IMG/VR virus record: IMGVR_UViG_3300035698_010479
Span: 1 to 64,000 of that record
DNA length: 64,000 nt
Direction: 5' to 3' (one strand)
Part shown: positions 18,564 to 32,694 of the stretch, piece after piece
Layout of the letters: each line of letters opens with the position of its first letter
Position numbering within the stretch: position 1 is the stretch's first letter
The notes under the pieces: model-generated
What the model was told of the DNA's origin: nothing
The model's input: only the letters and a program-made list of their open reading frames with translations
Database searches by the model: none
Made by a program: the position numbers and the translations under genes

Positions 18564-19343
18564 ATGAAAATTGCATTACCAATCTTCGATGGCGATAACA
18601 GACTAACACTAAACACCGCCTATGTACAATATGTAGCCAACGCTGGTTTTGAGCCTATTCTTGTTACAGGCGCTAATAACTTGCAAGAAATTGCAAAGAT
18701 GTGTGATGGCCTGTTACTACCTGGAGGTATTGATGTAGAGCCTACATTCTACGGGGAGGATAATTTCGGTAGTGAAGGATGTGACCCAGAAAAAGATGAT
18801 TTTGAAAGAAAACTTCTTCACGCTTTTGCAGCAGAAGGTAAAAAGATTTTTGGTATTTGTAGAGGACATCAGTTAATAGTAAAAGAATTTCTTCACATGT
18901 TTCATAAACAATGCGCAGGTTTGTCCTTTTGGCAGCATATTAATAATCATTCATTAGCGCAAGCTAGAACAGCAAAAAGGTCTACACCTACTCACAGCGT
19001 TACTGTAAATCCTCTTCTGCTTTATGGTGTACAAGGCGAAAAGAAACTCAGTACTATATTTGTGAATTCAATGCATCATCAAGCTTTACTATCCGATGGC
19101 CCTAAAAATCTTACTAAAATTATTGATGCCCACAATTATATTAAATGTACTGGTGTAACTGACTTCGGTGCTCCTGCTGCAAAAGATAACGATTGGTTAG
19201 TTGTTGAAAGTGTAGATGTGATGCTTAACGGTGTACATATGCGCGGTGTACAATGGCATCCAGAAGAACTGATGGATATTGGCTTGTTAACTCATTATTT
19301 TGCAGGAGTCGCTAAAGCGGATGGAGTCAAATTATACAGGTAA
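18564..19343 (+). CDS. class I glutamine amidotransferase (peptidase C26 / gamma-glutamyl-GABA hydrolase-like)
   Basis: LLLPGGIDV, GICRGHQ, VNSMHHQ, GVQWHPE. Confidence 0.9.
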   Translation: MKIALPIFDGDNRLTLNTAYVQYVANAGFEPILVTGANNLQEIAKMCDGLLLPGGIDVEPTFYGEDNFGSEGCDPEKDDFERKLLHAFAAEGKKIFGICRGHQLIVKEFLHMFHKQCAGLSFWQHINNHSLAQARTAKRSTPTHSVTVNPLLLYGVQGEKKLSTIFVNSMHHQALLSDGPKNLTKIIDAHNYIKCTGVTDFGAPAAKDNDWLVVESVDVMLNGVHMRGVQWHPEELMDIGLLTHYFAGVAKADGVKLYR

Positions 19344-19565
19344 GATATTTTGGCAAGTGAATGTGTTACTAGGTAATGATTTAGAGCATTCTCGTAAAGT
19401 AACAAGGGTGGATTTAAAAAACTTTATAGCGCAAGCTCCGGCAGAATTACGCAATGTAAAGGATATGGATATAATAAATAAATATGTAATACCTTACGTA
19501 GAAAGTATTTATGCTGTATATCAAGCACCCATAAAATATATAATAGTGAGGAAAGCATCCGCAAT

Positions 19566-19946
19566 ATGACAATACTTAAAGTATTTGTGTACGGAACTTT
19601 GAAAGTAGGAGGCAGATTTTCTACTCGTTTCGATACAGTTAGAGTAAGTTCTAAGGAAGGTAAAATAAAGGGAAAGCTTTACGATTTAGGAAGTTTTCCA
19701 GCTGTAAAGCTAGAGGGTAATTCTGACGTTATAGGGGAAGTGCATACTTATTCAAATGCTGAAGAAGTTGAAAAAGCAATGGATAGGATTGAAGGCTATA
19801 ACGGTCCTGGAAAATCTTATAATCTCTACAATAAACGTACTGTACAAGTAAACACCTCAGATGGTGAAGAAACTTGTATAATGTATGAATTCGCACGTGA
19901 TATAGAAGCTAATAGGCAAATAAAAGAAGGAGTTTGGAAGATATGA
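19566..19946 (+). CDS. gamma-glutamylcyclotransferase (AIG2-like)
   Basis: VFVYGTLK, LYDLGSFPA, GEV, MDRIEG. Confidence 0.9.
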   Translation: MTILKVFVYGTLKVGGRFSTRFDTVRVSSKEGKIKGKLYDLGSFPAVKLEGNSDVIGEVHTYSNAEEVEKAMDRIEGYNGPGKSYNLYNKRTVQVNTSDGEETCIMYEFARDIEANRQIKEGVWKI

Positions 19947-20215
19947 AAATTGTTGGATTAACTACTGTATCCTTTGACGTAGCAGTTGGTAAACCTTTAA
20001 ATGAGGAACGTCCAGAGGAAGTAGTAAAAGAAATTAAATATTTTGAATCTTCTCAAGTATATAATAAGTTTATACATGAGCCTGTATATGTAGTAGAATC
20101 TACTAATACTACATTAAAGGTCTTAATACCAGTTAGGTCGGTAGACGGTATTGAGTTGGAAACAAAAAAAGATGAAGTAGTTAAACCTGATCTTTCAGTT
20201 ATTGGTGAATTATGA
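19934..20215 (+). CDS. hypothetical protein
   Basis: ORF coupled to both neighbours. Confidence 0.5.
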   Translation: MEDMKIVGLTTVSFDVAVGKPLNEERPEEVVKEIKYFESSQVYNKFIHEPVYVVESTNTTLKVLIPVRSVDGIELETKKDEVVKPDLSVIGEL

Positions 20216-20895
20216 AAATTTTGATTGTTGGTGGTTACGGCGGATATTCAAAGCCTTTTCAAGACTTGGGTGAAGTTTCGTATAAAGAAGAGGATTTTGT
20301 TAAAGAACCTAATTCCTTCGATTTGTTAGTGTTTACAGGTGGCGAAGATGTATGCCCAGCATTTTATGGACACACATCACCAAAACACATGTGTGGTTAC
20401 AATGTTAAAAGGGATATTGCTGAACAAGACTTATATAATATCGCCTCTGAAAATGGTATAAAAATGACTGGTATTTGCCGTGGTAGTCAATTTTTGAATG
20501 TAATGGCTGGTGGTGAAATGATGCATCATATTACAAATCACGGCACAAGTCACTCCGTTGAGACTGTAGATGGTTGTGAAATTTTTGTAACATCAACACA
20601 CCACCAAATGTGTATGCCAGCTAAGCATGGTTATGTAATGGCCTGGTCTAAAGAAAGAAGATCTTCTGCATATTACGGTGATAAAGATGAACTAGTTAAA
20701 TATTCAAATAAAGAAGTAGAGAGTATCTATTACCCGGAAGAGAATATATTCGCAGTACAATACCACCCAGAATACATGGATAGTAAGAGTGATGGTTTTT
20801 TATGGTATAGAGAGGCTGTGTACAATTTTTTGCATATGACAACAGAAGAGTTTGCTGCACGATATATAAATAAAGTAGCTACAGCTACTATGTAA
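20212..20895 (+). CDS. class I glutamine amidotransferase (peptidase C26-like), second copy
   Basis: FTGGEDV, GICRGSQ, STHHQ, VQYHPE. Confidence 0.9.
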   Translation: MKILIVGGYGGYSKPFQDLGEVSYKEEDFVKEPNSFDLLVFTGGEDVCPAFYGHTSPKHMCGYNVKRDIAEQDLYNIASENGIKMTGICRGSQFLNVMAGGEMMHHITNHGTSHSVETVDGCEIFVTSTHHQMCMPAKHGYVMAWSKERRSSAYYGDKDELVKYSNKEVESIYYPEENIFAVQYHPEYMDSKSDGFLWYREAVYNFLHMTTEEFAARYINKVATATM

Positions 20896-20949
20896 TTTTA
20901 AAATTGGGGTAGTTAACAGTAAGTTGGCTACCCCATATATGAGACGACA

Positions 20950-21462
20950 ATGCCGACATTTAAAAACAACATAGGAAAACAAATATTTCTAGTAGCAGAA
21001 GAAAAACGCAGTATGACTGCTATAACCTTTTACAATAAATCAGAAGAAGTACATTCTTTTTTTAATAGTTGTGTTGCTGGAAGCATAACTGAAATGTCTC
21101 TACTACATGGTACACTTACAAAAGCAATAAGCGTACCCGAAGATATAAGTTCCAATATTGACATAACTGTAATAGTTAGACAAAATAAGTCTAATAGCTG
21201 TATTTTAATACCATGTGTAAGCCTGGAGTATGCGCAGGAGATTGTTTTGGCATTAGTTAGTTCATCAGTACAAGCAAATGATATATTCAGTGATGAAATG
21301 ATTGACGACATTATTGGTATTAGTAAAAAGAATATTGATGATATTTTCATCTTCTATGGCTATGAAGTAGAACTACATTATTCTTTTGACAAAACAGAAT
21401 TAGATGAAGAAATATTAGAAGGGAGTAAAGAAATATATGAACGAATCTCTTCAGAACAATGA
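20950..21462 (+). CDS. hypothetical protein
   Basis: 170-aa ORF. Confidence 0.55.
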   Translation: MPTFKNNIGKQIFLVAEEKRSMTAITFYNKSEEVHSFFNSCVAGSITEMSLLHGTLTKAISVPEDISSNIDITVIVRQNKSNSCILIPCVSLEYAQEIVLALVSSSVQANDIFSDEMIDDIIGISKKNIDDIFIFYGYEVELHYSFDKTELDEEILEGSKEIYERISSEQ

Positions 21463-21802
21463 TAACTTCACATTATACTATTTCACTGGTATATACCACT
21501 TATTCTCAGGAAGAGTAATAGGTTACATTGATGATAGACAATTTGCTGCAGTATTAACAAGTCCACAAACACTGGCAAGAAAATTAAGTACAATGCCACC
21601 GTTAGGATTTTATGACATTATAGGTGATGCGGCCGTAAAGCTGAGATTAGCTTTTTTGGCGAAGGATAATAATAGTAATAGACATTTAATACTGTCTGGA
21701 GTTATTAAACAAATAGACAGTTCTTTGTCATACGGTTCAGGCGAGATCACATACGTAGATGAATCAAATAATATGTTTTGTCTAGAAACGGAGGTAAAAT
21801 AA
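21437..21802 (+). CDS. hypothetical protein
   Basis: 121-aa ORF. Confidence 0.5.
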   Translation: MNESLQNNDNFTLYYFTGIYHLFSGRVIGYIDDRQFAAVLTSPQTLARKLSTMPPLGFYDIIGDAAVKLRLAFLAKDNNSNRHLILSGVIKQIDSSLSYGSGEITYVDESNNMFCLETEVK

Positions 21803-21808
21803 TTCGAC

Positions 21809-22543
21809 ATGTTGTCAACATCACTTATACCAATAAATAAATGTATTGTTACTGATTATATTGAATCAACTAAATACTCTCACTATACATCAGGATATCT
21901 TGTGTATATTGAGAGTATACAAAATGATGTTGATGTACTTTGTACAATATTAATAACAAGTAACACTGGTAAGTTATTACATAGACCGTCAATAGCTAAA
22001 ATCAGAACACCCTTGATATTGTGTAATGAACTGGTACCATCAGGTTTATATAGTAAATGCAATGGTTTTCTACTTGTGGATAGTGCAATGCAGTCATATT
22101 TGAAAATTGAAAGTCCTGATTTTATAAATATGCTATACGCACGAATAATAAGTTTAAATAGAATTAGTTGTAACTATTTCAATGGCACGGTTTTAATGAA
22201 CAATAATCCAGTAATAAAAAAATTCTTCACGGATTATAACGAGTCGGCAAAAGTACACAGTAAAGTAATGATAGGTAATGTAAATACTGATGATAAACGT
22301 ATAGTATTGGTTAACAATATAATGCTTTTAGAAAGTTTTATAAAGAAGTATTTACCTAAAAAAATAGACCCAATGCAGTTTCTAAAAAGAACTTTTAGCG
22401 TAGCCAGAGATTATGAAAAAAAGGTACTTATAAAGAAATTAGAATCTATTATAAGTAACAAAAACTACGACAAAATATTGAGTGATGTGCAGGAGAACAA
22501 AGATGCTTTACATAGGTACAAAAATAGTGGTTATTGGCTCTAA
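21809..22543 (+). CDS. hypothetical protein
   Basis: 244 aa; GGAGG RBS. Confidence 0.6.
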   Translation: MLSTSLIPINKCIVTDYIESTKYSHYTSGYLVYIESIQNDVDVLCTILITSNTGKLLHRPSIAKIRTPLILCNELVPSGLYSKCNGFLLVDSAMQSYLKIESPDFINMLYARIISLNRISCNYFNGTVLMNNNPVIKKFFTDYNESAKVHSKVMIGNVNTDDKRIVLVNNIMLLESFIKKYLPKKIDPMQFLKRTFSVARDYEKKVLIKKLESIISNKNYDKILSDVQENKDALHRYKNSGYWL

Positions 22544-23324
22544 TGTAAAAAGAAAAGCTGGACCTCGTGTGGGTAGTATTGGGTTTATAGTAGAGTTACT
22601 TCATACTAATAGACATATAATTAACGAAAAAGTACTTATGTACGAAGCCAAAATATTATTTACACGTTATGGCTTCCAAAAATACCAAAGATGTGAACTT
22701 AAAAAAGTCATGTTAGCTGTACCAATGTTCGATGGTAGTGAAAAAGCTACTAATAATACAATATCTTACCTAGTAAAAAGTATAAAAACTAGTGAAGTGT
22801 TTAATAAAAAGTCTGTACTTTTAGTAAGTCCTTCTAACTATTTTATTGGTGAGGATTTACGTAGTAAGCTGCATAGTTTTTTATTAAATGGTAGTATGCA
22901 TGATAAGTTAACAAGAGTAGCTGTTACATATAATACAAAAGATTTTCCAAACACGGAAAGGTTACACAGTTCATTAACTAAGGATGCAAGCAATTTTCTA
23001 CGCATTTGTACTGCAACAAAATATCATAATAAATTAAATACATTGCTTATGTACATGTACGGTATGAATATTGACATAATCAAGGAGCTTTTATCGTTGA
23101 TATCAAAATTAATATCCTTAGAGGAAATTGCACACAGAGACAAATATAAAAATCACACAACAGTAGAGCAAGATCTTATGCAATCACTATTTAAACCTTA
23201 TGAGTTTAAATATAATATTATAAAATGGGGTAAATATGCACCAGTAGCACTCTTTATGTTTTATGCAGAAATTAATGGCTTTCTTAGAACAGAAGGAAAT
23301 AAGGTTGTAACCAAACATCTTTAA
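22482..23324 (+). CDS. hypothetical protein
   Basis: 280-aa ORF directly upstream of the RNAP; true start probably ATG 22503. Confidence 0.6.
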   Translation: MMCRRTKMLYIGTKIVVIGSNVKRKAGPRVGSIGFIVELLHTNRHIINEKVLMYEAKILFTRYGFQKYQRCELKKVMLAVPMFDGSEKATNNTISYLVKSIKTSEVFNKKSVLLVSPSNYFIGEDLRSKLHSFLLNGSMHDKLTRVAVTYNTKDFPNTERLHSSLTKDASNFLRICTATKYHNKLNTLLMYMYGMNIDIIKELLSLISKLISLEEIAHRDKYKNHTTVEQDLMQSLFKPYEFKYNIIKWGKYAPVALFMFYAEINGFLRTEGNKVVTKHL

Positions 23325-23333
23325 GGAGATACA

Positions 23334-26300
23334 ATGTTCTACTCAAACCTTGATGCAATTATTACTGGTTTTGTAAGTCAATTTAATTCTAGAATTCTTA
23401 CAAGAGCAAATGCTCAAACATTTGGTGCCTCATTAGATGTAGACAATAATGATACAGAGTTGAATTTTGTAATGAAACGTGATGATATGCAGCACGTATT
23501 ATCAATCCCAAAATCTTTCGTAGAAAACGGAGTAAAGTTAATAAGAATAAATGGTATTGAACGTGCTGTTGGTAAATACTTTTGGAAAGTACAGAATAGA
23601 CTTATGGATTATGAAGATGTGATCTACGAAGTGCTATTTGGGTATCCTGCACATATGCTACCTGAGTATATGATTAAAAGTAACTCTTCAGCTATGCAGC
23701 AATTGCGTTATGCTTTTGAGAACAACAAAGTGGCTATAACACTTCGTAGCATTCAAAAGAGAGTAAATCATGTAGTAAATAATTTACCGATTCATGAGAC
23801 AAATCTAAACTCGTTCATCATGAATCATAGAATAACAATCTTTGATCCAGAGTTTAACGTATTAACAAATCCTGAAGAACAACATACTTATCAAGTGGAA
23901 AAAAATAAAGAATACTTTGATAAAGGATGGACATCTTTGGGATTATCCGATGGATGCCTTGCGGGAAAGAATTACATGTTGGATTACGACCTTAGGAAAT
24001 TATCACCTTTTGGAAGTAATTATCATAATCCACAAAGAAATCTGTACTCAACACTTGGTATGCGTGGTGACGAAGTACCTACTGTACATTCAACAACTAC
24101 ATTTAATTTAGCTAACCAAGGTCTCACAAGAAAAGGTTGGAATATGTTTACTATATTCGTTGATATCCCAGACGTATGGGAAGATCAGTTAATGGTAGAT
24201 ATAAGCCATGTTGACAAATTTATCGAATATACAAAACGTTATATCTGTTTTGGTGATGTACTTGTAGCTGAAGGTGATGAAATTTCGACAGATGACCAAT
24301 TGTTTGTTAACAAAACTGGCGAAATAAAAGCGTTTGATATTCAATGTGATCATGCAGTTGTAACATCTATTGAAGAAAAAGATGACAATATCGGTGGTGT
24401 TCTTTTCCCATCCAACGTGGTTACAATAACCTATCGTAGAAATCTTAAAGACGGTACAAAACTTACTAACCTAGCTGCAAATAAAGGTGTTATCAGGATG
24501 CGTGATTTAGGTTACGCTATAAATCCAGAAACAGGCAAGCAGCAGAAAATTGACGTAATTGTATCTGCTAAAGCAGTACTGAAAAGAAAGAATTATACTC
24601 AGATACTGGAAGCATTAATTAATAATCTAAACAATAACCAACCAGTTGTAATACCCGATGATGTAGTAATTACAGAAGAAGCTTTATCTTCGGCTTTAAC
24701 TTCTATTGGGCATAATGCAGACGGTACTTGGATATGTAACACCTATGCAGGGAATTTTAGATGTGTCGCCGGTAATGTTTTCTGGGGAGTAACACATGAT
24801 GCTGATGATACAGTATGGAGGCCTGGTACAACAAAAGCAGTTAATGGTAGAGGATTACGTGAAGCTGGTTTAAAGTTTTCAACAATAGAGTTCAGGGCGT
24901 TAACTACTCGTTTTGGTGCAAACAATCCTTTAGAAAGTGAAATTCTACACTATGCTCAAGGTTACCAGGATGTTAAAGAACTTCTAAACATATTGAAATG
25001 TAAAGTAGGCAAGAAGAACATTGAGTGTAGTATACATCATGTCAAGGATATCAAACCACTGCGACAAGAAGATGGAATAATGATACAACCAGAAGAACTG
25101 GTTCAGTCAATAGTGGACCCAGAACTTGCTAAAGATGGTTTCATGATGAAGCTTCCTGTAAAGTATCAGGTAGTTATAGATCATGAGTACAACGTACTTG
25201 CAAGTGGTTTTCCTTGCACAGTTGGCGAAATGATAGGAGAGACTAAAGTATTTAAAGTAATTCTTATTGACTCAATCTATGTGCCTTATGAGAATCTTCG
25301 TAAATGTTGGAAACATGATATAGGTAGAGTAGGTTTGAATGACCTTGGTAATGCTTTAAATACTGTAGTTGTTATGTCCCATAATTATCTTATTGATGAT
25401 GTAGCGTCAATAAATACCACAATGCTATACAAAGCTATAGGTACCTATTTTAGTATCGTAGCTAATAAGCTTAGTACAAAACGTGGTGAATTGAGTGTGC
25501 ATACTATGGCTGTTAGATACCCTCATTCAGCTAAAGCTGTTGCCACACTTAGTAATGAATTACCACCAAACACTGTAGAAATTCATAGTAGTATGGCAGC
25601 CAGTTTAAATGTGGTTGATGGTGACGTAGTATTAGCAGAGAGATTCCCTTGTTTGGGTTTCATGTCTCTTCGTCCACAACAAATAAAAATCACTGAAGAT
25701 CCAATGTGTAAATTTACCATTAGAGTTAGTGGTAATAGTTTGGGTTCTCAAGGGTTGGATTTTGATGGTGATGTTTTGTACATAGCAGCATTTTATTCCA
25801 AAGAAGCTAAGGCTGCTCTTAGGAAAGAGTTTTATACACCTAATGAATGCTGTATTAAACATATTAATTTCTTCAATAACAAGATGGGTTCACCAAGGCT
25901 TATGGAAATGTCACTGCTAGATTATCAAATAGCTCCTTTTGAAGTTTTAAACAAAGATAGTCACGCAGAGATTGTTAGTAAACTTACAGGTGTAAAGAGT
26001 AACACGGGGCCAGTTGTAGCATTGGCTTATAATCTTTTAAGAGTTATGGAGAACTCTTCTATATCTGACGACAGAGAATTAGAGTGTGAAGTTGAAGTGT
26101 TTATGGATACAGTAGCAAATAGTGTATTCAAGCAAAAACATGGTGTAAAATCACTGCATAAAGTGGTTACAGACGCTGTGTGTGCGGCTGACCTAAATAC
26201 TTTAATTAGTGAGGGGTTTGATCCAAAAACTTCCGAAATTATCTGTAAGAATATTACTGAAAAAGCAGCACAAATTGGAATTAAAGATGTAGCTGCTTAT

Positions 26301-26591
26301 CACAAATTGATTACAGCAAAAGGAGGTAGCAATGTAATTAATAAGATAGTGAAAGCACAAAATGTGTTGTATTTCACAAGTAGGGCCAGTTTATCAGGTT
26401 GTAAAATTGTTAAGAATCTAATGGACTACGCACAAGTAGATATACCAAGTAAGATTTTTACCAAGATTATGAATTTGAACACATCTCTTACCACAGTAGA
26501 TCATGAGGCTCTAAAAACATTGAAAAATCCAGAGTCTATAATATACTGTTCAGAGGTACTTAAGGCTTTAAACAGTCTAATAACAAAATAA
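23334..26591 (+). CDS. single-polypeptide two-barrel DNA-directed RNA polymerase (beta C-half fused to beta' catalytic core)
   Basis: Collinear beta motifs (HNPQRNL, WEDQ, DGTKLTNLAANKGVI, IDVIVS..AVLKRKN, THDADD, GLKFSTIEFRAL) then beta' motifs (KRGELS...RYPHSAKAV, ERFPCL, DFDGD at 25758-25772). Confidence 0.88.
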   Translation: MFYSNLDAIITGFVSQFNSRILTRANAQTFGASLDVDNNDTELNFVMKRDDMQHVLSIPKSFVENGVKLIRINGIERAVGKYFWKVQNRLMDYEDVIYEVLFGYPAHMLPEYMIKSNSSAMQQLRYAFENNKVAITLRSIQKRVNHVVNNLPIHETNLNSFIMNHRITIFDPEFNVLTNPEEQHTYQVEKNKEYFDKGWTSLGLSDGCLAGKNYMLDYDLRKLSPFGSNYHNPQRNLYSTLGMRGDEVPTVHSTTTFNLANQGLTRKGWNMFTIFVDIPDVWEDQLMVDISHVDKFIEYTKRYICFGDVLVAEGDEISTDDQLFVNKTGEIKAFDIQCDHAVVTSIEEKDDNIGGVLFPSNVVTITYRRNLKDGTKLTNLAANKGVIRMRDLGYAINPETGKQQKIDVIVSAKAVLKRKNYTQILEALINNLNNNQPVVIPDDVVITEEALSSALTSIGHNADGTWICNTYAGNFRCVAGNVFWGVTHDADDTVWRPGTTKAVNGRGLREAGLKFSTIEFRALTTRFGANNPLESEILHYAQGYQDVKELLNILKCKVGKKNIECSIHHVKDIKPLRQEDGIMIQPEELVQSIVDPELAKDGFMMKLPVKYQVVIDHEYNVLASGFPCTVGEMIGETKVFKVILIDSIYVPYENLRKCWKHDIGRVGLNDLGNALNTVVVMSHNYLIDDVASINTTMLYKAIGTYFSIVANKLSTKRGELSVHTMAVRYPHSAKAVATLSNELPPNTVEIHSSMAASLNVVDGDVVLAERFPCLGFMSLRPQQIKITEDPMCKFTIRVSGNSLGSQGLDFDGDVLYIAAFYSKEAKAALRKEFYTPNECCIKHINFFNNKMGSPRLMEMSLLDYQIAPFEVLNKDSHAEIVSKLTGVKSNTGPVVALAYNLLRVMENSSISDDRELECEVEVFMDTVANSVFKQKHGVKSLHKVVTDAVCAADLNTLISEGFDPKTSEIICKNITEKAAQIGIKDVAAYHKLITAKGGSNVINKIVKAQNVLYFTSRASLSGCKIVKNLMDYAQVDIPSKIFTKIMNLNTSLTTVDHEALKTLKNPESIIYCSEVLKALNSLITK

Positions 26592-26602: not shown

Positions 26603-26974
26603 ATGGCAAAATCTGTAGGTTTGAGTTTCAACAGAGTAAATCTCTTGGGTAGAGTAACCGGCGATCCTGTTGTAAATGGTGAGTGGGTAACTTTCAATCT
26701 TAAAACTATTGTACCAAAACTTGGAGCAGACAATAAGTGGCAAGAGGCAGAAGTTATGGTACCAATTTTGACAAATGATCAAAGAAAAGTAGACACTGTA
26801 AACAGCTTTGTACAGGATGAACGTCAACTGTATGTAGAAGGTTACGTAGAAGCATGGGAAGGTGGCTGTGGTGTATTCCTTAGCATGATTAAACTTGGTT
26901 CCAAAACCATGTTTGATCCTGATGCTAATGGTGGACAACAGCAGGGTAGTAAGAAAGGTAATTTCCCTAGTTAA
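26603..26974 (+). CDS. ssb: single-stranded DNA-binding protein (OB fold)
   Basis: NRVNLLGRVTGDP ... LYVEG; Gly/Gln-rich tail. Confidence 0.8.
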   Translation: MAKSVGLSFNRVNLLGRVTGDPVVNGEWVTFNLKTIVPKLGADNKWQEAEVMVPILTNDQRKVDTVNSFVQDERQLYVEGYVEAWEGGCGVFLSMIKLGSKTMFDPDANGGQQQGSKKGNFPS

Positions 26975-27036: not shown

Positions 27037-27441
27037 ATGCAACCAGATGTAAGTTTACAAAAAATAAATACACCAAAAGATATCAACATTGACAAAGCTA
27101 CATCACAAGAGGGTCGGTTGTTGGAATTAGAAGCTAAGATGTGCTCTATTGCACAAATGCTTTATATGTTTAAAAGGTCCGGCTTACCTAAAAAAGTAGT
27201 TTTAACAAAACGCAACACTACTGAAGAAGGAATACCTTTTAACACATGTTATCTTGGGTATACTAAGGGTTCAATATACCCGTATATACTTGTCGTAACC
27301 GAAGAAGGTAAGTATACTATAGGAGATAAAGAGTTTGAAACATTTGAAACGTCCACTGAATACTTATGTGGTAATGGCACAGATGGTTTTAAGTTTTGGC
27401 AAACATTTGAAGGTATCTCTTTAGCTGAGTCTATCAAATGA
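27037..27441 (+). CDS. RAMA/DUF4357-like DNA-binding domain protein
   Basis: G.YTIGDKEFET...YLCG...DGFKFW resembles the RAMA NGW.FW signature. Confidence 0.45.
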   Translation: MQPDVSLQKINTPKDINIDKATSQEGRLLELEAKMCSIAQMLYMFKRSGLPKKVVLTKRNTTEEGIPFNTCYLGYTKGSIYPYILVVTEEGKYTIGDKEFETFETSTEYLCGNGTDGFKFWQTFEGISLAESIK

Positions 27442-29876
27442 AAGTAGAAATATGTAATGTGTTAATTGTAGATATAACTAATGAAGCATTATTACAGGTA
27501 GTACTGGAGGATCTTACATATGACAATCCACTGTATAAAGAAGCTGTAAAGGCATTTAGGTCTACAAGAGGTATTCCACAAGTATTAAAAAACTTGTCAT
27601 TCTCTAATGGTCTTTATCAATTACCACGAGGATACTTTAATAGACTTTGTACAATTGCAGCGGACCTTGATATTGAAATTGAAATTACTGATACCAGGTC
27701 TATTGTACCATTTGAAACTACATATAACCACAGTGTTCATTTGCGTGATTATCAAATGACAGCTCTACAAACACTATCTAATTTTTCAGATGGGTTATTA
27801 GTAGCACCTGCTGGTAGTGGTAAAACAATTATAGGTATAGCTACAATATTAATGTGCGGTCAAAAGAGTTTATGGGTAACTCATACAAAACAATTATTAT
27901 TTCAATTTGTTGATAGAATAAAAGAATTTGTTGACATACCTGACGATGATATAGGTTTGATATATGATGGTAAATGGGATGCAGAAAAACCAGTAACAGC
28001 TGCACTAGTACAAACTTTACGTACGGACAAAGATAAGTTATCTGATATATCGCAAAATTTTGGTACTATAATAACTGATGAATGTCTAATATCAGGTACA
28101 AAGATAACTTTAATAAATGGGGATGAGAAGCTAGTAGAAGATGTTAATAATGGTGATGTAACGTTATATGGTGAAGTAAGTCATAAATTTAATAGATGTA
28201 CAAGAAAAACTATTGAATTAAGAACAGGGCACGGTAAGTTAGAAGGTACACTTACTCACCTACTACCAGTAATTACTAAAGAAAAAGAAACCATTGGCCC
28301 AGAAAATAAATTTAAGTCTTTTAAAGAAATTGATGTAGAATTTAAACCAATGAGTAGTATAAATGAAGAAGATTATTTATTATATTTACCTTCCTCACCA
28401 CATACTACAAAACATACGATTGGTAAAGTAAAGGCTAGATTATTAGCATTAATTGCCTGTGATGGTCATATAACAAAAAACTTGACTTGTCTACAGGTAG
28501 GTATAGTGAAAGACAAAGCTTGGTTTATTAACGAGATGATCATGAGTACTAGTATATTTAATGACGGCGACTTAAGGTATAGTAATTGTAAAAGGGGTGA
28601 CTTAATTATAAGGGAATATTCTAAAAAAGCAGTAACCTTTGTAAATTCATACGTACCTAAAGGTAATAAATCTAAACTTATAACAGTTCCTAAAATTATA
28701 AAAGAAACATCATTAGAAGAAATAAGTGATTACCTTCAAGTGGTATTTGACACAGAAGGGTCTGTCACAAATCAAATCTCAGTTACTATGTCTAATTTTA
28801 AGTACATTGAAGATATTCAGTTCCTTTTAAAAAAGTTCGGTATTATGGGTAGAATCATACCTATAAAGCGAAATGGGTATTCAAGAATAGCTATAAATGG
28901 TTATGACGCTCTACTTTTTTATACTAAAATTGGTTTTTCTATAGAGAGAAAACAAAAAGCACTATTTGAATTACTTAAAAAAACAAAAACTTTTATACGT
29001 ACAGTGTTATTTAGAGGCGTAACTTATAGATGTGTACCTATATTAGAAAAAACACATAATAATATTTTTAGGGTAGTATATGATTTCACCACAAAAGAAC
29101 ATTTATTTTCTGCAAATGGTGTATTAAGTTCTAATTGTCACCACCAACCCAGTTCCACATTTACTGAGGTGATAACTCAGCTTAATCCGTATTACTTATT
29201 TGGATTGACTGCTACTCCATCAAGACGGGATGGGCTAGAGACTGTTCTGTACCAAAATCTTGGACCAATAAGACATACAATACCAAGAACAGCAGTAGCA
29301 GATAGAATATTGACACCTGTGGTGTATACAAGACATTTAAATATTGATGGAATACCGGACGAAGTATCTTATCAAAAACTCTTGCAAATTTTAGTTAAGA
29401 GTACTGTACGTAATAATATTATAACAAAAGACGTTGTGGAACAAGCACGTGGTGGTAATATATGTATTGTGGTAACTGAAAGAGTACCACATGCAGAAAC
29501 ACTATATAATAAAATTAAAAAGTTATGGCCAAATACTGGAATAATGGTAGGTAAACATTCTGATAAACTACGTGATAAAACACTTGTAGGTTTGAAAGAT
29601 GGTAGTGTAACTGTATTAATTTGTACATCTCATCTACTAGGTGAAGGCTTCGATTTCGCACCACTAAATAGGTTGTTCATAACACTTCCTATTCGTAATC
29701 CAACTAGATGTGAACAGTTAGTTGGTAGAGTACAAAGAATAAGTGAAGGAAAAACAGACGCTTTTATATTTGATTACGTTGATAATCATGGTTTAACAAA
29801 GCATCAATATCGAAATTTTGGGGATAAAGGTTGTCGGTATAATGTATACAAGAAACTTGGCTGTACTATTTTATAA
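27438..29876 (+). CDS. SF2 (DExH, UvsW/Rad25-like) helicase interrupted by an intein
   Basis: LRDYQ, APAGSGKT, DE|CHH after intein removal, GLTATP.R.DG, GEGFD, QLVGRVQR. Confidence 0.92.
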   Translation: MKVEICNVLIVDITNEALLQVVLEDLTYDNPLYKEAVKAFRSTRGIPQVLKNLSFSNGLYQLPRGYFNRLCTIAADLDIEIEITDTRSIVPFETTYNHSVHLRDYQMTALQTLSNFSDGLLVAPAGSGKTIIGIATILMCGQKSLWVTHTKQLLFQFVDRIKEFVDIPDDDIGLIYDGKWDAEKPVTAALVQTLRTDKDKLSDISQNFGTIITDECLISGTKITLINGDEKLVEDVNNGDVTLYGEVSHKFNRCTRKTIELRTGHGKLEGTLTHLLPVITKEKETIGPENKFKSFKEIDVEFKPMSSINEEDYLLYLPSSPHTTKHTIGKVKARLLALIACDGHITKNLTCLQVGIVKDKAWFINEMIMSTSIFNDGDLRYSNCKRGDLIIREYSKKAVTFVNSYVPKGNKSKLITVPKIIKETSLEEISDYLQVVFDTEGSVTNQISVTMSNFKYIEDIQFLLKKFGIMGRIIPIKRNGYSRIAINGYDALLFYTKIGFSIERKQKALFELLKKTKTFIRTVLFRGVTYRCVPILEKTHNNIFRVVYDFTTKEHLFSANGVLSSNCHHQPSSTFTEVITQLNPYYLFGLTATPSRRDGLETVLYQNLGPIRHTIPRTAVADRILTPVVYTRHLNIDGIPDEVSYQKLLQILVKSTVRNNIITKDVVEQARGGNICIVVTERVPHAETLYNKIKKLWPNTGIMVGKHSDKLRDKTLVGLKDGSVTVLICTSHLLGEGFDFAPLNRLFITLPIRNPTRCEQLVGRVQRISEGKTDAFIFDYVDNHGLTKHQYRNFGDKGCRYNVYKKLGCTIL
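28083..29135 (+). mobile_element. intein (351 aa) with LAGLIDADG homing endonuclease, inserted in Walker B (DE/CHH)
   Basis: Starts CLISGTKI; block B TLTH; LLALIACDG and QVVFDTEG motifs; VYDFTT...FSANGVLSSN followed by C+1. Confidence 0.9.
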
Positions 29877-29940: not shown

Positions 29941-31044
29941 ATGCAGATAGAAAAGTCAGTAGTTATGTCAAATATTGCAGGTATTGAAGATAGTTTAATA
30001 AGAATGCCTGCAATATTAAGAAAAGAATTACAAGTAAATTTAGGTAATATTATTCTTGTTAGGGGACTACCCTTGCAAGTTAATAAAATGTTTAGTCAAG
30101 AAGTTATGTCTAGTGTATGTAAAGCATATGTTTCTGAAAATGTGTTAAAAAAATTAGGTATTCCAACACATAATCTATCAGTTGAGCAACATATAACTAT
30201 GGGATGTGACCCAGAATTATTTTTAGTTGACTCCAAAACAAATAAATTATATAACCCCGGATTTTTGGTTAAAAAAACAGCTCCTGTTGGGTATGATGGT
30301 ATGCTAGCAGAACTTAGACCTAACCCAGATGTAGATCCAGATAAAGTAATAAAGAATTTATACCAGTTAATAATTAATTTAAAAAATGTACTAGTAAAAA
30401 ATAATCTACATCATGTAAGAATGATAGCTAGGTCTAGTGGGTGGAACTTATTTGCGGGATTCCATGTACATCTTGGCATACCTAAGAAACTACTCGATCC
30501 TGGTATGCCTAATTATATAAAAATACTTAGAGTAATATTAAAATCATTGGATTACTACGTGGGTACTCTTGCAGTATTAGCAGAAGGAGTTGATTTTACA
30601 AGAAGATGTAATCCACTAGTAGCTTATGGTAAAGTTGGTGATTTTAGAGTTGATAATAGAACTTTAGAGTATAGAGTACCTGGTGGTGCATTACTTAAAC
30701 ACCCAGATATAGCAAGGGGTTTAATAAGCGTAGCATCATTAGTAGCACACGATGTAATTGAAAGATTGCGTATATTTACAAATGATTTTGTTGGTGAAAT
30801 AGCCGATGAGAGTATCTTGGCGAAGGAAATATATCCAAATTTAATAGACACACAGAGTATGTTTCAATTAATATGTGCACCAGATGTCAGTAAAGCTTGG
30901 GAGGAAATAAATAACATAAACCAAGATCTAAGTTGCATGGTTAATTATGATTATTACAGTGAGGCATTGGAAAAGTTTTATAACTTACTACATTTAAAAA
31001 TAGCTGATGATATTTGGCTGAATTGGAGTAAAATAGATGTATAA
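29941..31044 (+). CDS. phiEco32-like COOH-NH2 ligase type 2 with N-terminal extension
   Basis: MGCDPELF, DG..AELRP, AGFHVHLG, RR...YGK.GDFR, LEYRVPG. Confidence 0.85.
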   Translation: MQIEKSVVMSNIAGIEDSLIRMPAILRKELQVNLGNIILVRGLPLQVNKMFSQEVMSSVCKAYVSENVLKKLGIPTHNLSVEQHITMGCDPELFLVDSKTNKLYNPGFLVKKTAPVGYDGMLAELRPNPDVDPDKVIKNLYQLIINLKNVLVKNNLHHVRMIARSSGWNLFAGFHVHLGIPKKLLDPGMPNYIKILRVILKSLDYYVGTLAVLAEGVDFTRRCNPLVAYGKVGDFRVDNRTLEYRVPGGALLKHPDIARGLISVASLVAHDVIERLRIFTNDFVGEIADESILAKEIYPNLIDTQSMFQLICAPDVSKAWEEINNINQDLSCMVNYDYYSEALEKFYNLLHLKIADDIWLNWSKIDV

Positions 31045-32644
31045 CGATAAATGGATTTTCTTTAGTAATTTACCCGGAAAGCCTTCTCTAACAAACGAAG
31101 AAGTTAAATATTGGTTAGGGAGTTTAAATAAAGTATTAAAAGTAGGAGTTGAGTTTGAGTTTAACTTACAGGATGCTAAGGGCTTCTGTAGAGGTGCAAG
31201 TGAGAGTTGTCCGTGTATTAAAATGGATGACGCGCATGATTGCTGGAAAGTATGTCTTAACGAACATGAATGTAAAAACGAATTTGGTAAAGATTTTCAA
31301 GCCAATTGTCATAAACAGTTTTGTAGTGGTTTTAGAAGTGCCTGCATATCGTGTAAAGATTTCAAAGTAAATTGTTTGAATTGTAAATATATGTACGATC
31401 CAAGTTATGACCCTGACTCTATAAGAAATTTTTTACGGAGTTCTTTAGATCCATCTAAAAGTTATGGTAACTTAAGCCGGTCAGGTGTACATAGTGTAAT
31501 ATGTGACGGTTCTTTGTTAGGAGAAGGTCAGGAAGGTAAGGGTGTTGAAATTATCACGGTAGGCAGGCGTGTAGATTATTGGGAATTTTATAATATGATA
31601 AGTAATATTATTTCTATGTCTATAGAAAAAGGTGCTTACGTAAACGAAAGATGTTCCACACACATACATGTTCTTGGAGGTTATTTCGAGGCACGTGAAA
31701 ATAATTCAAAATATAGTGATGTAAATGACCTGGAAAAGCCGTTACCACAAATAGTGTTAGCCAATTTCCACCAGTTATGTAGAAGGTACCAAAACGCTAT
31801 TACTTGGATGTCAATGGGTTTAGATAAACCTGACCGTTTAACTAGATGGGAAAAGTACAGAGTATCGTTACTAAATACTTCACCAGTATCCATGTCAATG
31901 CAAGATATTATACGTAGATTAGAGGAAATTTCATATAAACCAAGAGGTAAATATGCTTGGACTAACTACATGTATTCAAAATTTGACAAAAATAACGATA
32001 TAACCAGGTTGCATGTAGAATTACGTGCATTAGATGGTATGATGTCTACAAGCGTTGTAACAGCAATGTGCTGCCTGTACCAAGCAATGATGATGAAAGC
32101 AGTAGAGATATCAAAATACGGTTTATTAGAGCTAGGTTCAAAAGAATGGTTTGAACAGACGCTTGATGTTAAGAACAACATGATGAATAACTGCCCTCAA
32201 GGTTGGTCAGAAAACAGATTTTCAGATACCTCTAATTTGAGAGAGGAACAAAAAGATATTTTACGTATGGAGTCTCTTGATCTTCTCAACCAATTGAAGC
32301 ATTTGTTAATGAGAACTGGCCCTTCTTTTGAAGTACTTGAGAAACTGGCACAAAAACCTGTAGCTTTCTTTAGATGTGATGGGGACTCTTGGGAAACCAT
32401 TGAAGAATATTTTGCTGTATTCAGAGCTAGTGAAACTATTCTAGATCAAAAACTTGACGAAATAATTGATTTTAGGACAGTGTCTGGGTGTGTGAATGAA
32501 TTAGCTTGGTTAGATCAAGTTAGTGGTATGTTAGTTAAAGAAGGTATAGCTACATCTGAGCAAGTACTAAATACAATAGCTATTCATAAACGAAATGGTC
32601 TGTGTATATGGTCTGATAACCTCGGTACCTTATTAAAAGTATAA
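31037..32644 (+). CDS. putative amidoligase (COOH-NH2 ligase type 1) with Cys-rich insertion
   Basis: VGVEFEF, DGSL, VEIIT, CSTHIHV, KY...N, VELR. Confidence 0.75.
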   Translation: MYNDKWIFFSNLPGKPSLTNEEVKYWLGSLNKVLKVGVEFEFNLQDAKGFCRGASESCPCIKMDDAHDCWKVCLNEHECKNEFGKDFQANCHKQFCSGFRSACISCKDFKVNCLNCKYMYDPSYDPDSIRNFLRSSLDPSKSYGNLSRSGVHSVICDGSLLGEGQEGKGVEIITVGRRVDYWEFYNMISNIISMSIEKGAYVNERCSTHIHVLGGYFEARENNSKYSDVNDLEKPLPQIVLANFHQLCRRYQNAITWMSMGLDKPDRLTRWEKYRVSLLNTSPVSMSMQDIIRRLEEISYKPRGKYAWTNYMYSKFDKNNDITRLHVELRALDGMMSTSVVTAMCCLYQAMMMKAVEISKYGLLELGSKEWFEQTLDVKNNMMNNCPQGWSENRFSDTSNLREEQKDILRMESLDLLNQLKHLLMRTGPSFEVLEKLAQKPVAFFRCDGDSWETIEEYFAVFRASETILDQKLDEIIDFRTVSGCVNELAWLDQVSGMLVKEGIATSEQVLNTIAIHKRNGLCIWSDNLGTLLKV

Positions 32645-32694
32645 TTTAAACTAAGCAGCTATATCTTATGGCTGCTTAGTTAAAAAGAGGATAT

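What the first reader, a model, noticed from the sequence alone, without database searches (positions are those of the whole stretch)
23334..26591. Minimal single-chain RNA polymerase: collinear beta/beta' fusion in 1085 aa
Seen, in order, with recalled E. coli equivalents: HNPQRNL (HDDANRAL), WEDQLMV (FEDSILV), TKLTNLAANKG (DKMAGRHGNKG, same Lys spacing), IDVIVS..VLKRKN (VDIVLN..VPSRMN), THDADD (NHLVDD), GLKFSTIE (GQRFGEME); then KRGELS..RYPHSAKAV (KQGRFR..RVDYSGRSV), ERFPCL (NRAPTL), LDFDGD (ADFDGD). Possible bridge helix KSNTGPVV and trigger loop FKQKHG follow. Both barrels are in one chain at about 40% of the length of beta+beta'. Jumbo-phage RNAPs are usually split into several chains, and this one keeps more cellular-like motifs than I recall for YonO-type enzymes. 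No sigma or alpha was seen.
Basis: partly seen in the sequence, partly recalled or inferred. Interest (0 to 1): 0.82.

Follow-up and report, generated by a model that had tools for sequence, protein, structure and literature searches.

The report
Compact single-chain phage RNA polymerase
This 1085-residue gene from a large uncultured phage encodes both catalytic barrels of a cellular-type RNA polymerase (beta then beta') fused into one chain about 40% of the normal size; it belongs to a widespread family for which I found no published description, so it could serve as a small model enzyme for how such polymerases work.

Summary
The ORF 23334-26591 (+) is intact and has a strong ribosome-binding site. 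Pfam finds the beta barrel (Rpb2_6) in 39/42 members and the beta' barrel (Rpb1_2) in 41/42. A confident AlphaFold model (pLDDT 88) matches beta/Rpb2 chains at E 1e-14. It also shows a 33-residue bridge-like helix followed by a helix-loop-helix with an invariant His at its tip.

The window is the first 64 kb of a 228-kb IMG/VR phage contig. Relatives sit on viral contigs up to about 300 kb, and none is in GenBank phages. Distant relatives encode the same enzyme as two overlapping genes.

It is not a YonO-family member (no detectable similarity). No NCBIfam model covers it, and I found no paper describing it. However, single-chain two-barrel RNAPs are a known kind (YonO, crAss gp66, P23-45 gp64, killer-plasmid Orf6).

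No conserved accessory subunit was found: the always-linked 535-aa neighbour is a glutamine-synthetase-like ligase. Catalytic activity, promoter use and self-sufficiency are untested. Verdict: real, interesting, a new variant of a known kind.

The parts
23334..26591 (+). Gene for the 1085-aa single-chain two-barrel RNA polymerase (beta-like half then beta'-like half)
   Evidence: Intact ORF; Pfam Rpb2_6 + Rpb1_2; AF2 pLDDT 87.9, pTM 0.84; Foldseek to beta/Rpb2 at E 3.5e-14
23324..23329 (+). Shine-Dalgarno AAGGAG, 5 nt before the ATG, overlapping the stop of the upstream ORF (translational coupling)
   Evidence: Sequence read directly
23334..24023 (+). N-terminal domain (aa 1-230): 8-strand beta region plus helices; stands in for the roughly 670-aa N-terminal lobes of beta; no detectable sequence homology to beta
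   Evidence: DSSP of the model; no profile hit in this region
24024..24923 (+). Beta-type double-psi barrel region (aa 231-530) with HNPQRNL, WEDQ, a roughly 75-aa all-beta insert (296-370, candidate minimal SBHM/flap), TKLTNLAANKG, IDVIVS..KRKN, GLKFSTIE
   Evidence: Pfam Rpb2_6 aa 301-464; hhalign to E. coli beta 1031-1120; invariant columns
24456..24488 (+). Catalytic lysine motif TKLTNLAANKG (K376, K384 = E. coli beta K1065, K1073)
   Evidence: Aligned by hmmsearch/hhalign; invariant in 42/42
24822..24857 (+). Position (aa 497-508) where distant relatives are split into two overlapping genes
   Evidence: L004 and L005: the upstream ORF ends and P0190 / the downstream ORF starts here, with 14-16 nt overlap
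24924..25478 (+). Connector (aa 531-715): helices, a small beta-sheet domain and two long helices; replaces the beta C-terminus plus the roughly 330-aa beta' N-terminal clamp
   Evidence: DSSP; no profile hits; inference from motif positions
25479..25823 (+). Beta'-type double-psi barrel (aa 716-830) with switch-2-like KRGELS..RYPHSAKAV, ERFPCL and LDFDGD
   Evidence: Pfam Rpb1_2 aa 723-829, E 4.9e-5; 41/42 members; PDB Rpb1/Rpo1N alignments
25758..25772 (+). Metal-binding aspartate triad DFDGD (D809, D811, D813)
   Evidence: Invariant; aligned to the DFDGD of Rpb1 / Pol V
25953..26051 (+). Bridge-helix candidate (aa 874-906, GVKSNTGPVVALAYNLLRVME)
   Evidence: Continuous 33-residue helix in the model; invariant G886 K888 T891 G892 P893 Y899 R903 E906; ungapped match to E. 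coli beta' 782-802 read
26073..26183 (+). Trigger-loop candidate (aa 914-950; FKQKHG 932-937 at the tip)
   Evidence: Helix 914-936, loop, helix 942-950; F932 Q934 K935 H936 G937 invariant; matches E. coli MRTFHIGG 932-939
26184..26588 (+). C-terminal helical domain (aa 951-1085), lineage-specific
   Evidence: DSSP; no homology detected
22482..23324 (+). ORF directly upstream (280 aa; true start probably at residue 8): positional orthologue in 18 relatives, only the N-terminal ~100 aa conserved; possible accessory factor, function unknown
   Evidence: blastp across loci; no Pfam/PHROG hit; Atlas uninformative
26603..26974 (+). Downstream 123-aa ORF, weak SSB/OB-fold similarity in orthologues
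   Evidence: 17 loci; SSB hits in 3 members; bona fide SSB genes near the RNAP in L009/L010
27037..27441 (+). Downstream 134-aa ORF with a sub-threshold DUF4357/RAMA-type C-terminal domain in orthologues
27438..29876 (+). SF2 helicase (T5 D10/SPO1 type) with a roughly 350-aa LAGLIDADG insert; linked to the RNAP gene in all 25 loci that reach far enough

Best explanation
The gene encodes a catalytically competent DNA-dependent RNA polymerase of the two-barrel (multisubunit-type) superfamily. The beta-type barrel (two catalytic lysines) and the beta'-type barrel (DFDGD Mg-binding triad), a bridge helix and a trigger loop with its catalytic histidine are all carried on one 125-kDa chain. Most of the lobes, the clamp, the flap tip, the secondary-channel rim and the jaw have been deleted. 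It belongs to a large family confined to uncultured tailed phages with genomes of about 130-300 kb. I infer that it is a non-virion enzyme made after infection that transcribes phage genes independently of host RNAP and sigma, so it would be rifampicin-insensitive, possibly helped by fast-evolving small proteins encoded next to it. Shown: the ORF, the motifs, family-wide invariance of the catalytic residues, fold homology, the viral context, and the existence of split relatives. Inferred: activity, template and product, the stage of infection, and the lack of obligatory partners.
For: Intact ORF with a strong SD. Pfam Rpb2_6 and Rpb1_2 in order along the chain, in 39 and 41 of 42 members. Profile hit to bacterial beta at E 4e-5 over the catalytic Lys segment, and hhalign to E. 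coli beta 1031-1120. Catalytic and structural motifs invariant over 44-85% identity and retained in split relatives at 23-31% identity. AF2 model pLDDT 87.9 / pTM 0.84 with a bridge-like helix and a trigger-loop-like hairpin. Foldseek: 990 PDB hits at E<=1e-3, the top 50 all beta/Rpb2; viral Rpb2- and Rpb1-type chains and whole-chain matches to uncharacterised phage two-barrel proteins. Context is a large phage: IMG/VR contig of 228 kb, relatives on viral contigs up to 298 kb, with tRNAs, DNA ligase, CCA-adding enzyme, NAMPT, Ro60 and amidoligases. The gene sits among replication/nucleic-acid genes (SSB-like, helicase), not structural genes.
Against: There is no biochemical evidence. For the window protein alone both Pfam hits are below the gathering thresholds. 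The residue equivalent to E. coli beta' N458 (ribose recognition) is Gly/Leu here, so sugar selectivity is not guaranteed. The N-terminal 230 aa, the connector and the C-terminal 135 aa have no recognisable homologues, so DNA loading, RNA exit and promoter recognition cannot be explained from sequence. Only 64 of 228 kb were visible, so a second RNAP, sigma-like factors or further subunits elsewhere cannot be excluded. No phage-specific promoter motif was found near the operon.
Confidence: 0.8

Rival explanations
1. It is only the catalytic core of a multi-protein polymerase: one or more neighbouring small proteins (the 280-aa ORF directly upstream, the 123-aa SSB-like and 134-aa RAMA-like ORFs downstream) or unlinked phage/host proteins are obligatory subunits or specificity factors, as gp68/gp226 are for the phiKZ/AR9 nvRNAPs and Orf7 is for the killer-plasmid enzyme.
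For: The ORF immediately upstream is a positional orthologue in 18 loci and is translationally coupled to the RNAP gene. The 123- and 134-aa ORFs recur in 17 and 14 loci. The clamp and flap are drastically reduced, so extra DNA-holding parts may be needed.
Against: None of these ORFs is detectable in the divergent subclade, which still has the RNAP (L009, L010, L019-L022, L030). The one universally linked unknown (535 aa) is a GS/YbdK/PafA-fold ligase, not an RNAP part. The helicase is a generic T5 D10-type phage helicase found in 3735 phage records. YonO, crAss gp66 and P23-45 gp64 work as single chains (PMC5467207; PMC10770324).
Confidence: 0.3
2. It is a virion-packaged early RNA polymerase injected with the DNA (as in N4, crAss-like phages, phiKZ vRNAP and P23-45 gp96).
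For: The best whole-chain structural match is a protein annotated 'minor tail protein' of an uncultured siphovirus. ME3_36, a two-barrel-like protein, lies in a tail module. Many RNAP-encoding phages carry two enzymes (PMC10770324).
Against: The gene lies among replication/metabolism genes, far from any recognisable structural gene, in all relatives. The protein has no extra N- or C-terminal domains or tail-protein fusion. No paralogue was seen in the window or on the 14 IMG/VR contigs.
Confidence: 0.1
3. It is a two-barrel polymerase used for something other than mRNA synthesis, such as a replication primase / primer-synthesising RNAP, an RNA-dependent RNA polymerase (QDE-1-like) or a PolD-like DNA polymerase.
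For: The conserved neighbours are SSB-like proteins, a D10-type helicase and, further off, a DNA ligase. The beta' N458 equivalent is not conserved. QDE-1 and PolD show that the fold supports other activities (PMC9508822; PMC4996933).
Against: The best sequence and structure matches are to transcription beta/Rpb2 and Rpb1 chains, not to QDE-1 or PolD. The beta' R425 equivalent (R770), which contacts the NTP 2'-OH in cellular RNAPs, is invariant, as are the trigger-loop His and a bridge helix typical of transcribing enzymes.
Confidence: 0.08
4. It is an inactive relic or structural protein that only retains RNAP-like motifs.
For: None beyond the absence of experiments.
Against: Every catalytic residue is invariant across 42 sequences down to 44% identity and is kept in relatives at 23-35% identity. 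The ORF is intact in hundreds of contigs.
Confidence: 0.02

Closest known systems
Killer-plasmid (pGKL2) Orf6 RNA polymerase of Kluyveromyces lactis, 982 aa, an Rpb2::Rpb1 fusion (PMC2919709)
   Same: Same architecture and size class: beta-type barrel then beta'-type barrel in one chain of about 1000 aa, with about half of the cellular sequence deleted and lineage-specific N-terminal and junction segments.
   Different: Orf6 is on a eukaryotic cytoplasmic linear plasmid, is thought to derive from eukaryotic Rpb2/Rpb1, and works with a small second subunit (Orf7; my own knowledge of Sykora et al. 2018, cited in PMC7598289). The phage protein carries bridge helix and trigger loop in the same chain. 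Sequence relationship could not be tested here (no Orf6 sequence available).
YonO of Bacillus prophage SPbeta (single-chain two-barrel RNAP; PMC5467207)
   Same: Phage-encoded, single polypeptide, homologous to multisubunit RNAPs, and sigma-independent (as reported for YonO).
   Different: No detectable sequence similarity (hhalign E 0.23, hmmsearch E 0.12). YonO (839 aa, DNDGD) hits no Pfam RNAP model, whereas this family hits both barrel models. Iyer et al. place YonO with the RdRP-like clade that lacks the SBHM insert in the beta barrel (PMC7824862); here a roughly 75-aa all-beta insert occupies that position.
phiKZ / AR9 jumbo-phage multisubunit RNAPs (PMC7598289, PMC4666361, PMC5449584)
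   Same: Large-phage enzymes distantly related to beta/beta', without alpha, omega or sigma. The weak PHROG hits (phrog_3295, phrog_2987, E about 1e-5) are to these families.
   Different: Those enzymes are split into 4-5 polypeptides that together cover full-length beta/beta' and need a fifth specificity subunit. This one is a single chain at 40% of the length. The candidate fifth subunit tested here is a ligase. Neither phiKZ nor AR9 chains appeared in the PDB profile search at E<=1.
crAss-like phage phi14:2 gp66, P23-45 gp64/gp96 and QDE-1 (single-chain two-barrel polymerases with solved structures; PMC10770324)
   Same: One-chain two-barrel enzymes of phages; P23-45 gp64 is a non-virion enzyme of comparable role.
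   Different: They form the second major clade, distinct from the multisubunit clade (PMC10770324). This protein's best PDB matches are cellular beta/Rpb2. gp96 scores only E 0.03 and gp66/QDE-1 do not score at all by sequence.
Cellular beta and beta' (including natural beta::beta' fusions of Helicobacter/Wolbachia type, NCBIfam PRK09603/PRK14844, about 2890 aa)
   Same: Collinear conserved motifs, catalytic residues, bridge helix and trigger loop; beta-then-beta' gene order as in rpoBC.
   Different: 60% of the sequence is missing (lobes, Rif-pocket region, flap tip, clamp, zinc sites, rim helices, jaw). Bit scores are 14-31 against cut-offs above 800. No alpha, omega or sigma was seen.
'Cyano_RUMTOR_01356' likely-ssRNAP family of siphoviruses (in-house profile name in Supplementary Data 4 of PMC10770324) and look-alikes in Microcystis phage MaMV-DC and Acinetobacter phage ME3
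   Same: Best whole-chain structural matches (TM 0.52 over 1236 columns to a Siphoviridae sp. protein; ME3 and MaMV-DC proteins at E 6e-14 to 1.5e-9); DFDGD motif.
   Different: No sequence similarity was detectable to any GenBank phage, even at E<=10. ME3_36 has DHDQD and no alignable motifs. Assigning the BFVD hits to that family is my inference.

Membership tests
Two-barrel (double-psi beta-barrel) RNA polymerase superfamily | Beta'-type barrel carrying the DxDxD metal-binding triad | tested here: met
   DFDGD 809-813 invariant; Pfam Rpb1_2 in 41/42 members, best E 9e-7; aligned to the Rpb1 DFDGD
Two-barrel (double-psi beta-barrel) RNA polymerase superfamily | Beta-type barrel contributing two conserved basic residues (E. 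coli K1065, K1073) | tested here: met
   K376 and K384 invariant; aligned to DKMAGRHGNKG by hmmsearch (E 4e-5) and hhalign; Pfam Rpb2_6 in 39/42
Two-barrel (double-psi beta-barrel) RNA polymerase superfamily | Two barrels juxtaposed to form one active site (3D) | tested here: inconclusive
Two-barrel (double-psi beta-barrel) RNA polymerase superfamily | Templated NTP polymerisation | not testable with these tools
   Needs biochemistry
Multisubunit-type (cellular-like) clade of two-barrel RNAPs | SBHM (flap) insert inside the beta barrel, absent from the YonO/RdRP clade (PMC7824862) | tested here: inconclusive
   A roughly 75-aa all-beta insert (aa 296-370) lies between WEDQ and the Lys motif, and the Pfam Rpb2_6 alignment spans 301-464. 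The fold of the insert was not superposed.
Multisubunit-type (cellular-like) clade of two-barrel RNAPs | Bridge helix followed by a trigger loop with a catalytic His | tested here: met
   Helix 874-906; helix-loop-helix 914-950 with invariant H936; ungapped matches to E. coli beta' 782-802 and 932-936. Model and sequence level only.
Multisubunit-type (cellular-like) clade of two-barrel RNAPs | Assembly with alpha-dimer/omega and initiation through sigma/TFB-type factors | tested here: not met
   None found among about 40 scanned ORFs of the window or among conserved neighbours. Only 64 of 228 kb were examined.
YonO family | Detectable sequence homology to SPbeta YonO | tested here: not met
   hhalign E 0.23 outside the catalytic motifs; hmmsearch E 0.12; blastp nothing
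phiKZ/AR9-type jumbo-phage RNAP | Beta and beta' homologues split into 4-5 polypeptides covering the full length | tested here: not met
   Single 1085-aa chain; split relatives have only two genes totalling about 1040 aa
phiKZ/AR9-type jumbo-phage RNAP | Fifth, promoter-specificity subunit (gp68/gp226-like) | tested here: not met
   The only universally linked unknown protein (535 aa) folds as a GS/YbdK/PafA ligase
crAss gp66 / QDE-1 / P23-45 clade | Closer sequence/structure similarity to these than to cellular RNAPs | tested here: not met
   The PDB profile search finds bacterial beta at 4e-5, gp96 only at 0.03, and gp66/QDE-1 not at all. The top 50 Foldseek PDB hits are all beta/Rpb2.
Killer-plasmid Orf6-type Rpb2::Rpb1 fusion | Sequence membership in the Orf6 family | not testable with these tools
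Cyano_RUMTOR_01356 ssRNAP family | Match to that family's profile | not testable with these tools
   The profile is not available, and the record BK033905 is not in the local phage set. Only a structural resemblance to probable members was seen.

The most novel reading that the evidence does not exclude
A self-sufficient 125-kDa enzyme of the cellular (multisubunit) RNAP lineage that performs promoter recognition, melting, elongation with a functional bridge helix and trigger loop, and termination without any partner. It would be the smallest enzyme of that lineage retaining those elements. It would also be a deep-branching lineage whose fused state is ancestral, since its split relatives break inside the beta homology region rather than at the cellular beta|beta' junction. 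This bears on how the two-subunit core arose.
Probability: 0.3. Interest if true: 0.8.

Novelty: new variant of a known kind. Interest (0 to 1): 0.62.

Why it matters
Cellular RNA polymerases are 400-kDa assemblies, and it is hard to say which parts are truly needed for catalysis, translocation and fidelity. A natural 125-kDa chain that keeps the two barrels, switch 2, the bridge helix and the trigger-loop histidine, but lacks most of the clamp, lobes, flap tip and secondary-channel rim, would be a compact test bed for those questions and possibly a useful orthogonal transcription tool. The family is abundant: at least 288 clusters at 90% identity, across gut, sediment and groundwater samples. 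It marks a lineage of 130-300-kb phages with no cultured or GenBank representative, so it is also a handle on the biology of that lineage. The split relatives show that fusion and fission of the catalytic core happen within one phage lineage, which is relevant to scenarios for the origin of beta and beta'.

Tried and rejected
1. The 535-aa protein that is linked to the RNAP in 24/24 loci was tested as a phiKZ-gp68/AR9-gp226-like fifth subunit. Its AF2 model (pLDDT 83) matches YbdK, PafA/Dop and glutamine synthetases, so it is a carboxylate-amine ligase of the surrounding amidoligase module. Rejected.

2. The linked SF2 helicase was considered as an RNAP-specific (Rad25-like) partner. It is a generic T5 D10/SPO1-type helicase found in 3735 phage records, most of them without an RNAP. 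There is no specific support for a partnership.

3. The upstream ORFs 20950-23324 were considered as conserved subunits. They evolve fast: two of the four are seen only in the closest relatives, and none is detectable in the divergent subclade.

4. YonO membership was rejected.

5. Cultured representatives: tblastn of the window protein (E<=10), of a divergent member (P0150) and of the 535-aa protein against 50,697 GenBank phages found nothing meaningful. Megablast of 24 kb found nothing.

6. ME3_36 as a sequence relative: it has a DxDxD signature but no alignable similarity.

7. Host inference from GTDB: the hits are short contigs in MAGs of six unrelated phyla, so probably mis-binned phage DNA.

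8. Promoters: sigma70-like sites occur at chance frequency (90 vs 89.5 expected). The one recurrent intergenic motif clusters around tRNA-like genes and the Ro60 gene, not around the RNAP operon.

9. hhalign of the family profile against a single E. coli beta' sequence gave no useful alignment. The beta' evidence rests on Pfam and PDB HMM hits and on motifs.

10. Literature: five full-text searches and seven papers read found no description of this family. The published crAss RNAP paper (Nature 2021) is not held, and the 23 family alignments of PMC10770324 (its Supplementary Data 3) are not among the held files.

Full report
**Observation.** The ORF at 23334-26591 (+) is open for 1085 codons. 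It starts at an ATG placed 5 nt after an AAGGAG Shine-Dalgarno that overlaps the stop codon of the preceding ORF. I fetched E. coli MG1655 rpoB and rpoC and confirmed that each recalled E. coli string is real and collinear: RpoB 673, 812, 1064, 1094, 1103, 1236 and 1267; RpoC 334, 346, 424 and 459. The length ratio is 39.5%.

**Is it more than chance?** Pfam finds RNA_pol_Rpb2_6 at aa 301-464 (E 1.7e-3) and RNA_pol_Rpb1_2 at aa 723-829 (E 4.9e-5). Both are just under the gathering thresholds for this one protein. Across a 42-member family alignment, however, 39 and 41 members hit them, with best E-values of 9e-10 and 9e-7. PHROGs gives two 'RNA polymerase beta subunit' families at about 1e-5. 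A family profile hits bacterial beta chains of the PDB at E 4e-5, exactly over ...RKISDGDKLAGRHGNKGVI...[21 protein letters not shown]. hhalign aligns aa 341-432 to E. coli beta 1031-1120.

- N232 P233 R235 N236
- D284 Q285
- K376 N379 N383 K384 G385
- R418 N420
- K514 S516 E519
- K716 G718
- R728 P730 K734
- R770 F771 P772
- D809 D811 G812 D813
- G886 V887 K888 T891 G892 P893
- F932 Q934 K935 H936 G937 (all)

Only THDADD is not conserved in the family.

**Structure.** AlphaFold2 with the family alignment gives mean pLDDT 87.9 and pTM 0.84. Against the PDB, Foldseek returns 990 hits at E<=1e-3; the top 50 are all beta/Rpb2/RpoB chains of bacteria, archaea, eukaryotes and ASFV (E 3.5e-14 to 1.7e-11). 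Against viral models the hits include Rpb2-type and, lower down, Rpb1-type (poxvirus Rpo147) chains. The best whole-chain matches are:

- a 'minor tail protein' of an uncultured siphovirus (TM 0.52 over 1236 columns)
- two proteins of Acinetobacter jumbo phage ME3
- one protein of Microcystis phage MaMV-DC

The model has a continuous helix at 874-906 containing GVKSNTGPVVALAYNLLRVME. Read against E. coli beta' at a constant offset of 104, G782/Y795/R799/D802 fall on the invariant G886/Y899/R903/E906. After it comes a helix-loop-helix (914-936, 942-950) with FKQKHG at the tip. Against E. coli MRTFHIGG this puts F932/K933/H936 on M932/R933/H936. The bridge-helix and trigger-loop proposals are therefore supported at model and sequence level.

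Between WEDQ (282-285) and the lysine motif (375-385) lies a roughly 75-residue all-beta insert. This is where cellular beta carries the SBHM/flap, which Iyer et al. use to separate the cellular-like clade from the YonO/RdRP clade (PMC7824862). I could not superpose it. The much-reduced regions, judged from motif spacing, are:

| Region | E. coli | This protein |
|---|---|---|
| beta N-terminus, up to HDDANRAL | about 670 aa | 230 aa |
| beta EDS to the Lys motif | 250 aa | 90 aa |
| beta C-terminus plus beta' N-terminal clamp | about 400 aa | about 195 aa |
| DFDGD to the bridge helix | 319 aa | 78 aa |
| after the trigger loop | 468 aa | 148 aa |

**Family and genome.** The word-indexed search found 288 relatives at E<=1e-3 among 8000 scored candidates. 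The top 120 are 43-85% identical and 922-1190 aa long, on contigs up to 325 kb, and all are unnamed or 'hypothetical'. The exhaustive profile search of 1.84 billion representatives found 251 proteins, about 25 of them full-length 50%-identity clusters, followed by a steep drop.

The window itself is positions 1-64000 of IMGVR_UViG_3300035698_010479 (228,458 bp). Thirteen other IMG/VR contigs (45-298 kb) carry relatives. In GTDB genomes the gene occurs only on 16-43-kb contigs of MAGs assigned to Arcobacteraceae, Muribaculaceae, Woesearchaeota, Stahlbacteria, Patescibacteria and Altiarchaeales. That pattern indicates mis-binned viral DNA rather than hosts.

The window is 33% G+C with all genes on one strand. 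It encodes glutamine amidotransferases, phiEco32-type COOH-NH2 ligases, a RimK-like ATP-grasp enzyme, DNA ligase, CCA-adding enzyme, Ro60/TROVE, NAMPT and at least 8 tRNAs. No GenBank phage (50,697 records) matches the RNAP, a divergent member or the neighbouring DNA.

**Split relatives.** The nearest proteins outside the family are P0190 (537 aa; matches aa 508-1026; 23% identity; keeps LDFDGD, R-Y-P, K-x-G, KHG) and P0196 (506 aa; matches aa 219-496; 26% identity; keeps HHPKR, YED, the K...GKG motif, SRKN). On their contigs each is flanked by the other half. In L004 a beta-like partial ORF (31% identical to aa 268-489) ends 14 nt inside P0190. In L005 P0196 is followed, with a 16-nt overlap, by an ORF whose start aligns weakly with aa 512-652 (21% identity, E 0.017). 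So a sister lineage encodes the same enzyme as two translationally coupled genes. The break is at aa 497-508, inside the beta homology region just before GLKFSTIE, and not at the cellular beta|beta' junction.

**Neighbourhood and possible partners.** I compared 30 loci. The RNAP gene is followed within 2-5 kb by an SF2 helicase in all 25 loci that reach far enough. Further on come a COOH-NH2 ligase, a 530-574-aa unknown (24/24 loci) and a GATase.

- I tested the 535-aa unknown as a possible gp68/gp226-like fifth subunit. Its model (pLDDT 83) matches YbdK, PafA/Dop and glutamine synthetases (E 2.7e-6 to 1e-3), so it is another carboxylate-amine ligase.
- The helicase is a generic T5 D10/SPO1-type enzyme present in 3735 phage records.
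- The ORF directly upstream (22482-23324) has positional orthologues in 18 loci, but only its first ~100 residues are conserved. Nothing identifies it.
- The 123-aa downstream ORF has weak SSB/OB similarity. Divergent relatives carry a true SSB gene there.
- The 134-aa ORF has a sub-threshold DUF4357/RAMA-type domain.
- None of these small ORFs is detectable in the divergent subclade (L009, L010, L019-L022, L030).

No second RNAP-like ORF or [RK]xP...DxDxD signature other than the RNAP, apart from a chance match in the CCA-adding enzyme, occurs in the window. Sigma70-like sites occur at chance frequency.

**Comparison with known systems.**

- YonO, fetched from SPbeta, shows no similarity to the family (hhalign E 0.23, hmmsearch E 0.12, no Pfam hit at E<=1).
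- phiKZ/AR9 enzymes are split into 4-5 chains covering full-length beta/beta' (PMC7598289). None of their PDB chains scored at E<=1.
- crAss gp66 and QDE-1 did not score, and P23-45 gp96 scored E 0.03.
- The closest architectural analogue is the killer-plasmid Orf6, a 982-aa Rpb2::Rpb1 fusion with about half the sequence deleted (PMC2919709).
[quoted passage not shown] Its survey names families such as ORF6_Kl_lactis, Cyano_RUMTOR_01356 ('likely ssRNAPs'), YonO and CAC1139. I could not obtain those profiles.
- The ESM Atlas shows several clusters of single-chain proteins (911-1675 aa, mostly viral) carrying both barrel Pfams, one of them auto-named 'putative DNA-directed RNA polymerase'.
- NCBIfam has no model for the family: the hits are 14-31 bits to rpoB/rpoA' against cut-offs above 800. 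Another fused protein, P0248 (1561 aa), is plainly bacterial-like (E 1e-121) and belongs to a different kind.
- Five literature searches found no description of this family.

**Verdict.** This is a compact, collinear beta-beta' fusion with all catalytic elements of a two-barrel RNA polymerase. It belongs to a large, unnamed, apparently undescribed family of big uncultured phages and is distinct from YonO and from the split jumbo-phage enzymes. Because single-chain and fused two-barrel RNAPs are already an established kind, I rate it a new variant of a known kind rather than categorically new. Activity, template and product, timing, promoters and independence from partners are inferences that need the experiments listed.

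Noticed in passing
window 27438-29876: The SF2 helicase is 812 aa here but 456-504 aa in nearly all relatives. The extra ~350 aa carry a LAGLIDADG_3 domain (aa 431-499), so this is an intein or homing-endonuclease insertion. One other relative (L017, 833 aa) has it too.
   Followed up: partly
window 50360-50388, 53476-53504, 54107-54135, 54221-54249, 57503-57531: A recurrent intergenic element, GGTG(T/A)ATAGTATGGTTACTTC, is often preceded by TAGCTAGTTCC and followed by T-arm-like GGTTCGAnTCC. It flanks the Ro60/TROVE gene (54316-55761). These may be Y-RNA-like (YrlA-type, tRNA-like) ncRNAs or a phage promoter.
   Followed up: partly
window 53562-53708 and 57448-57576: Rfam tRNA matches of 147 and 129 nt (49 and 44 bits), so tRNA-like genes with long insertions. 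ARAGORN did not call them.
   Followed up: no
window 50469-50707: Group I catalytic intron (RF00028, 65.6 bits, full model length) in a 1-kb stretch without a long ORF. The host gene was not identified.
   Followed up: no
window 42733-54093: Cluster of 8 ARAGORN tRNA genes (Leu-tag, Gln, Arg-tct, Met x2, Thr, Pro, Asn) plus one more Rfam tRNA at 43620-43691.
   Followed up: no
window 17421-20895 and 29941-39282: Unusually large amidoligase/peptide-modification module conserved with the RNAP across the family. It has three COOH-NH2 ligases (17421-18344 by orthology with a weak Pfam hit in relatives; 29941-31044; 36859-38187), two Peptidase_C26-type GATases (18564-19343, 20212-20895), a GGACT-like ORF (19566-19946, by orthology), a GATase_6 protein (35125-36852) and a RimK-like ATP-grasp enzyme (38191-39282).
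   Followed up: partly
window 31037-32644: The 535-aa protein present in 24/24 related loci has a GS/YbdK/PafA carboxylate-amine ligase fold plus a low-confidence insert (aa ~55-110) with eight invariant cysteines. No Pfam or PHROG model recognises it.
   Followed up: yes
L033:33172-37980 (Acinetobacter phage ME3, gene ME3_36): A 1603-aa 'hypothetical protein' in the tail/baseplate module of cultured jumbo phage ME3 carries an [RK]xP...DHDQD signature. ME3 proteins were among the top structural matches to the RNAP model, so ME3 may encode unannotated two-barrel polymerase-like proteins, one of them possibly virion-associated.
   Followed up: partly
P0248: A different single-chain beta-beta' fusion of 1561 aa with strong similarity to bacterial rpoB/rpoC (E 1e-121 to the NCBIfam beta/beta' model). 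The Atlas shows further fused clusters of 911-1675 aa, so reduced fused RNAPs seem to have arisen repeatedly in uncultured phages.
   Followed up: partly
window 20906-20936: Hairpin GGGGTAG(N15)CTACCCC in the 54-nt gap before the first gene (20950) of the RNAP-containing gene string, just after a terminator-like stem-loop at 20874-20889. This may be a transcription-unit boundary or a regulatory site.
   Followed up: no
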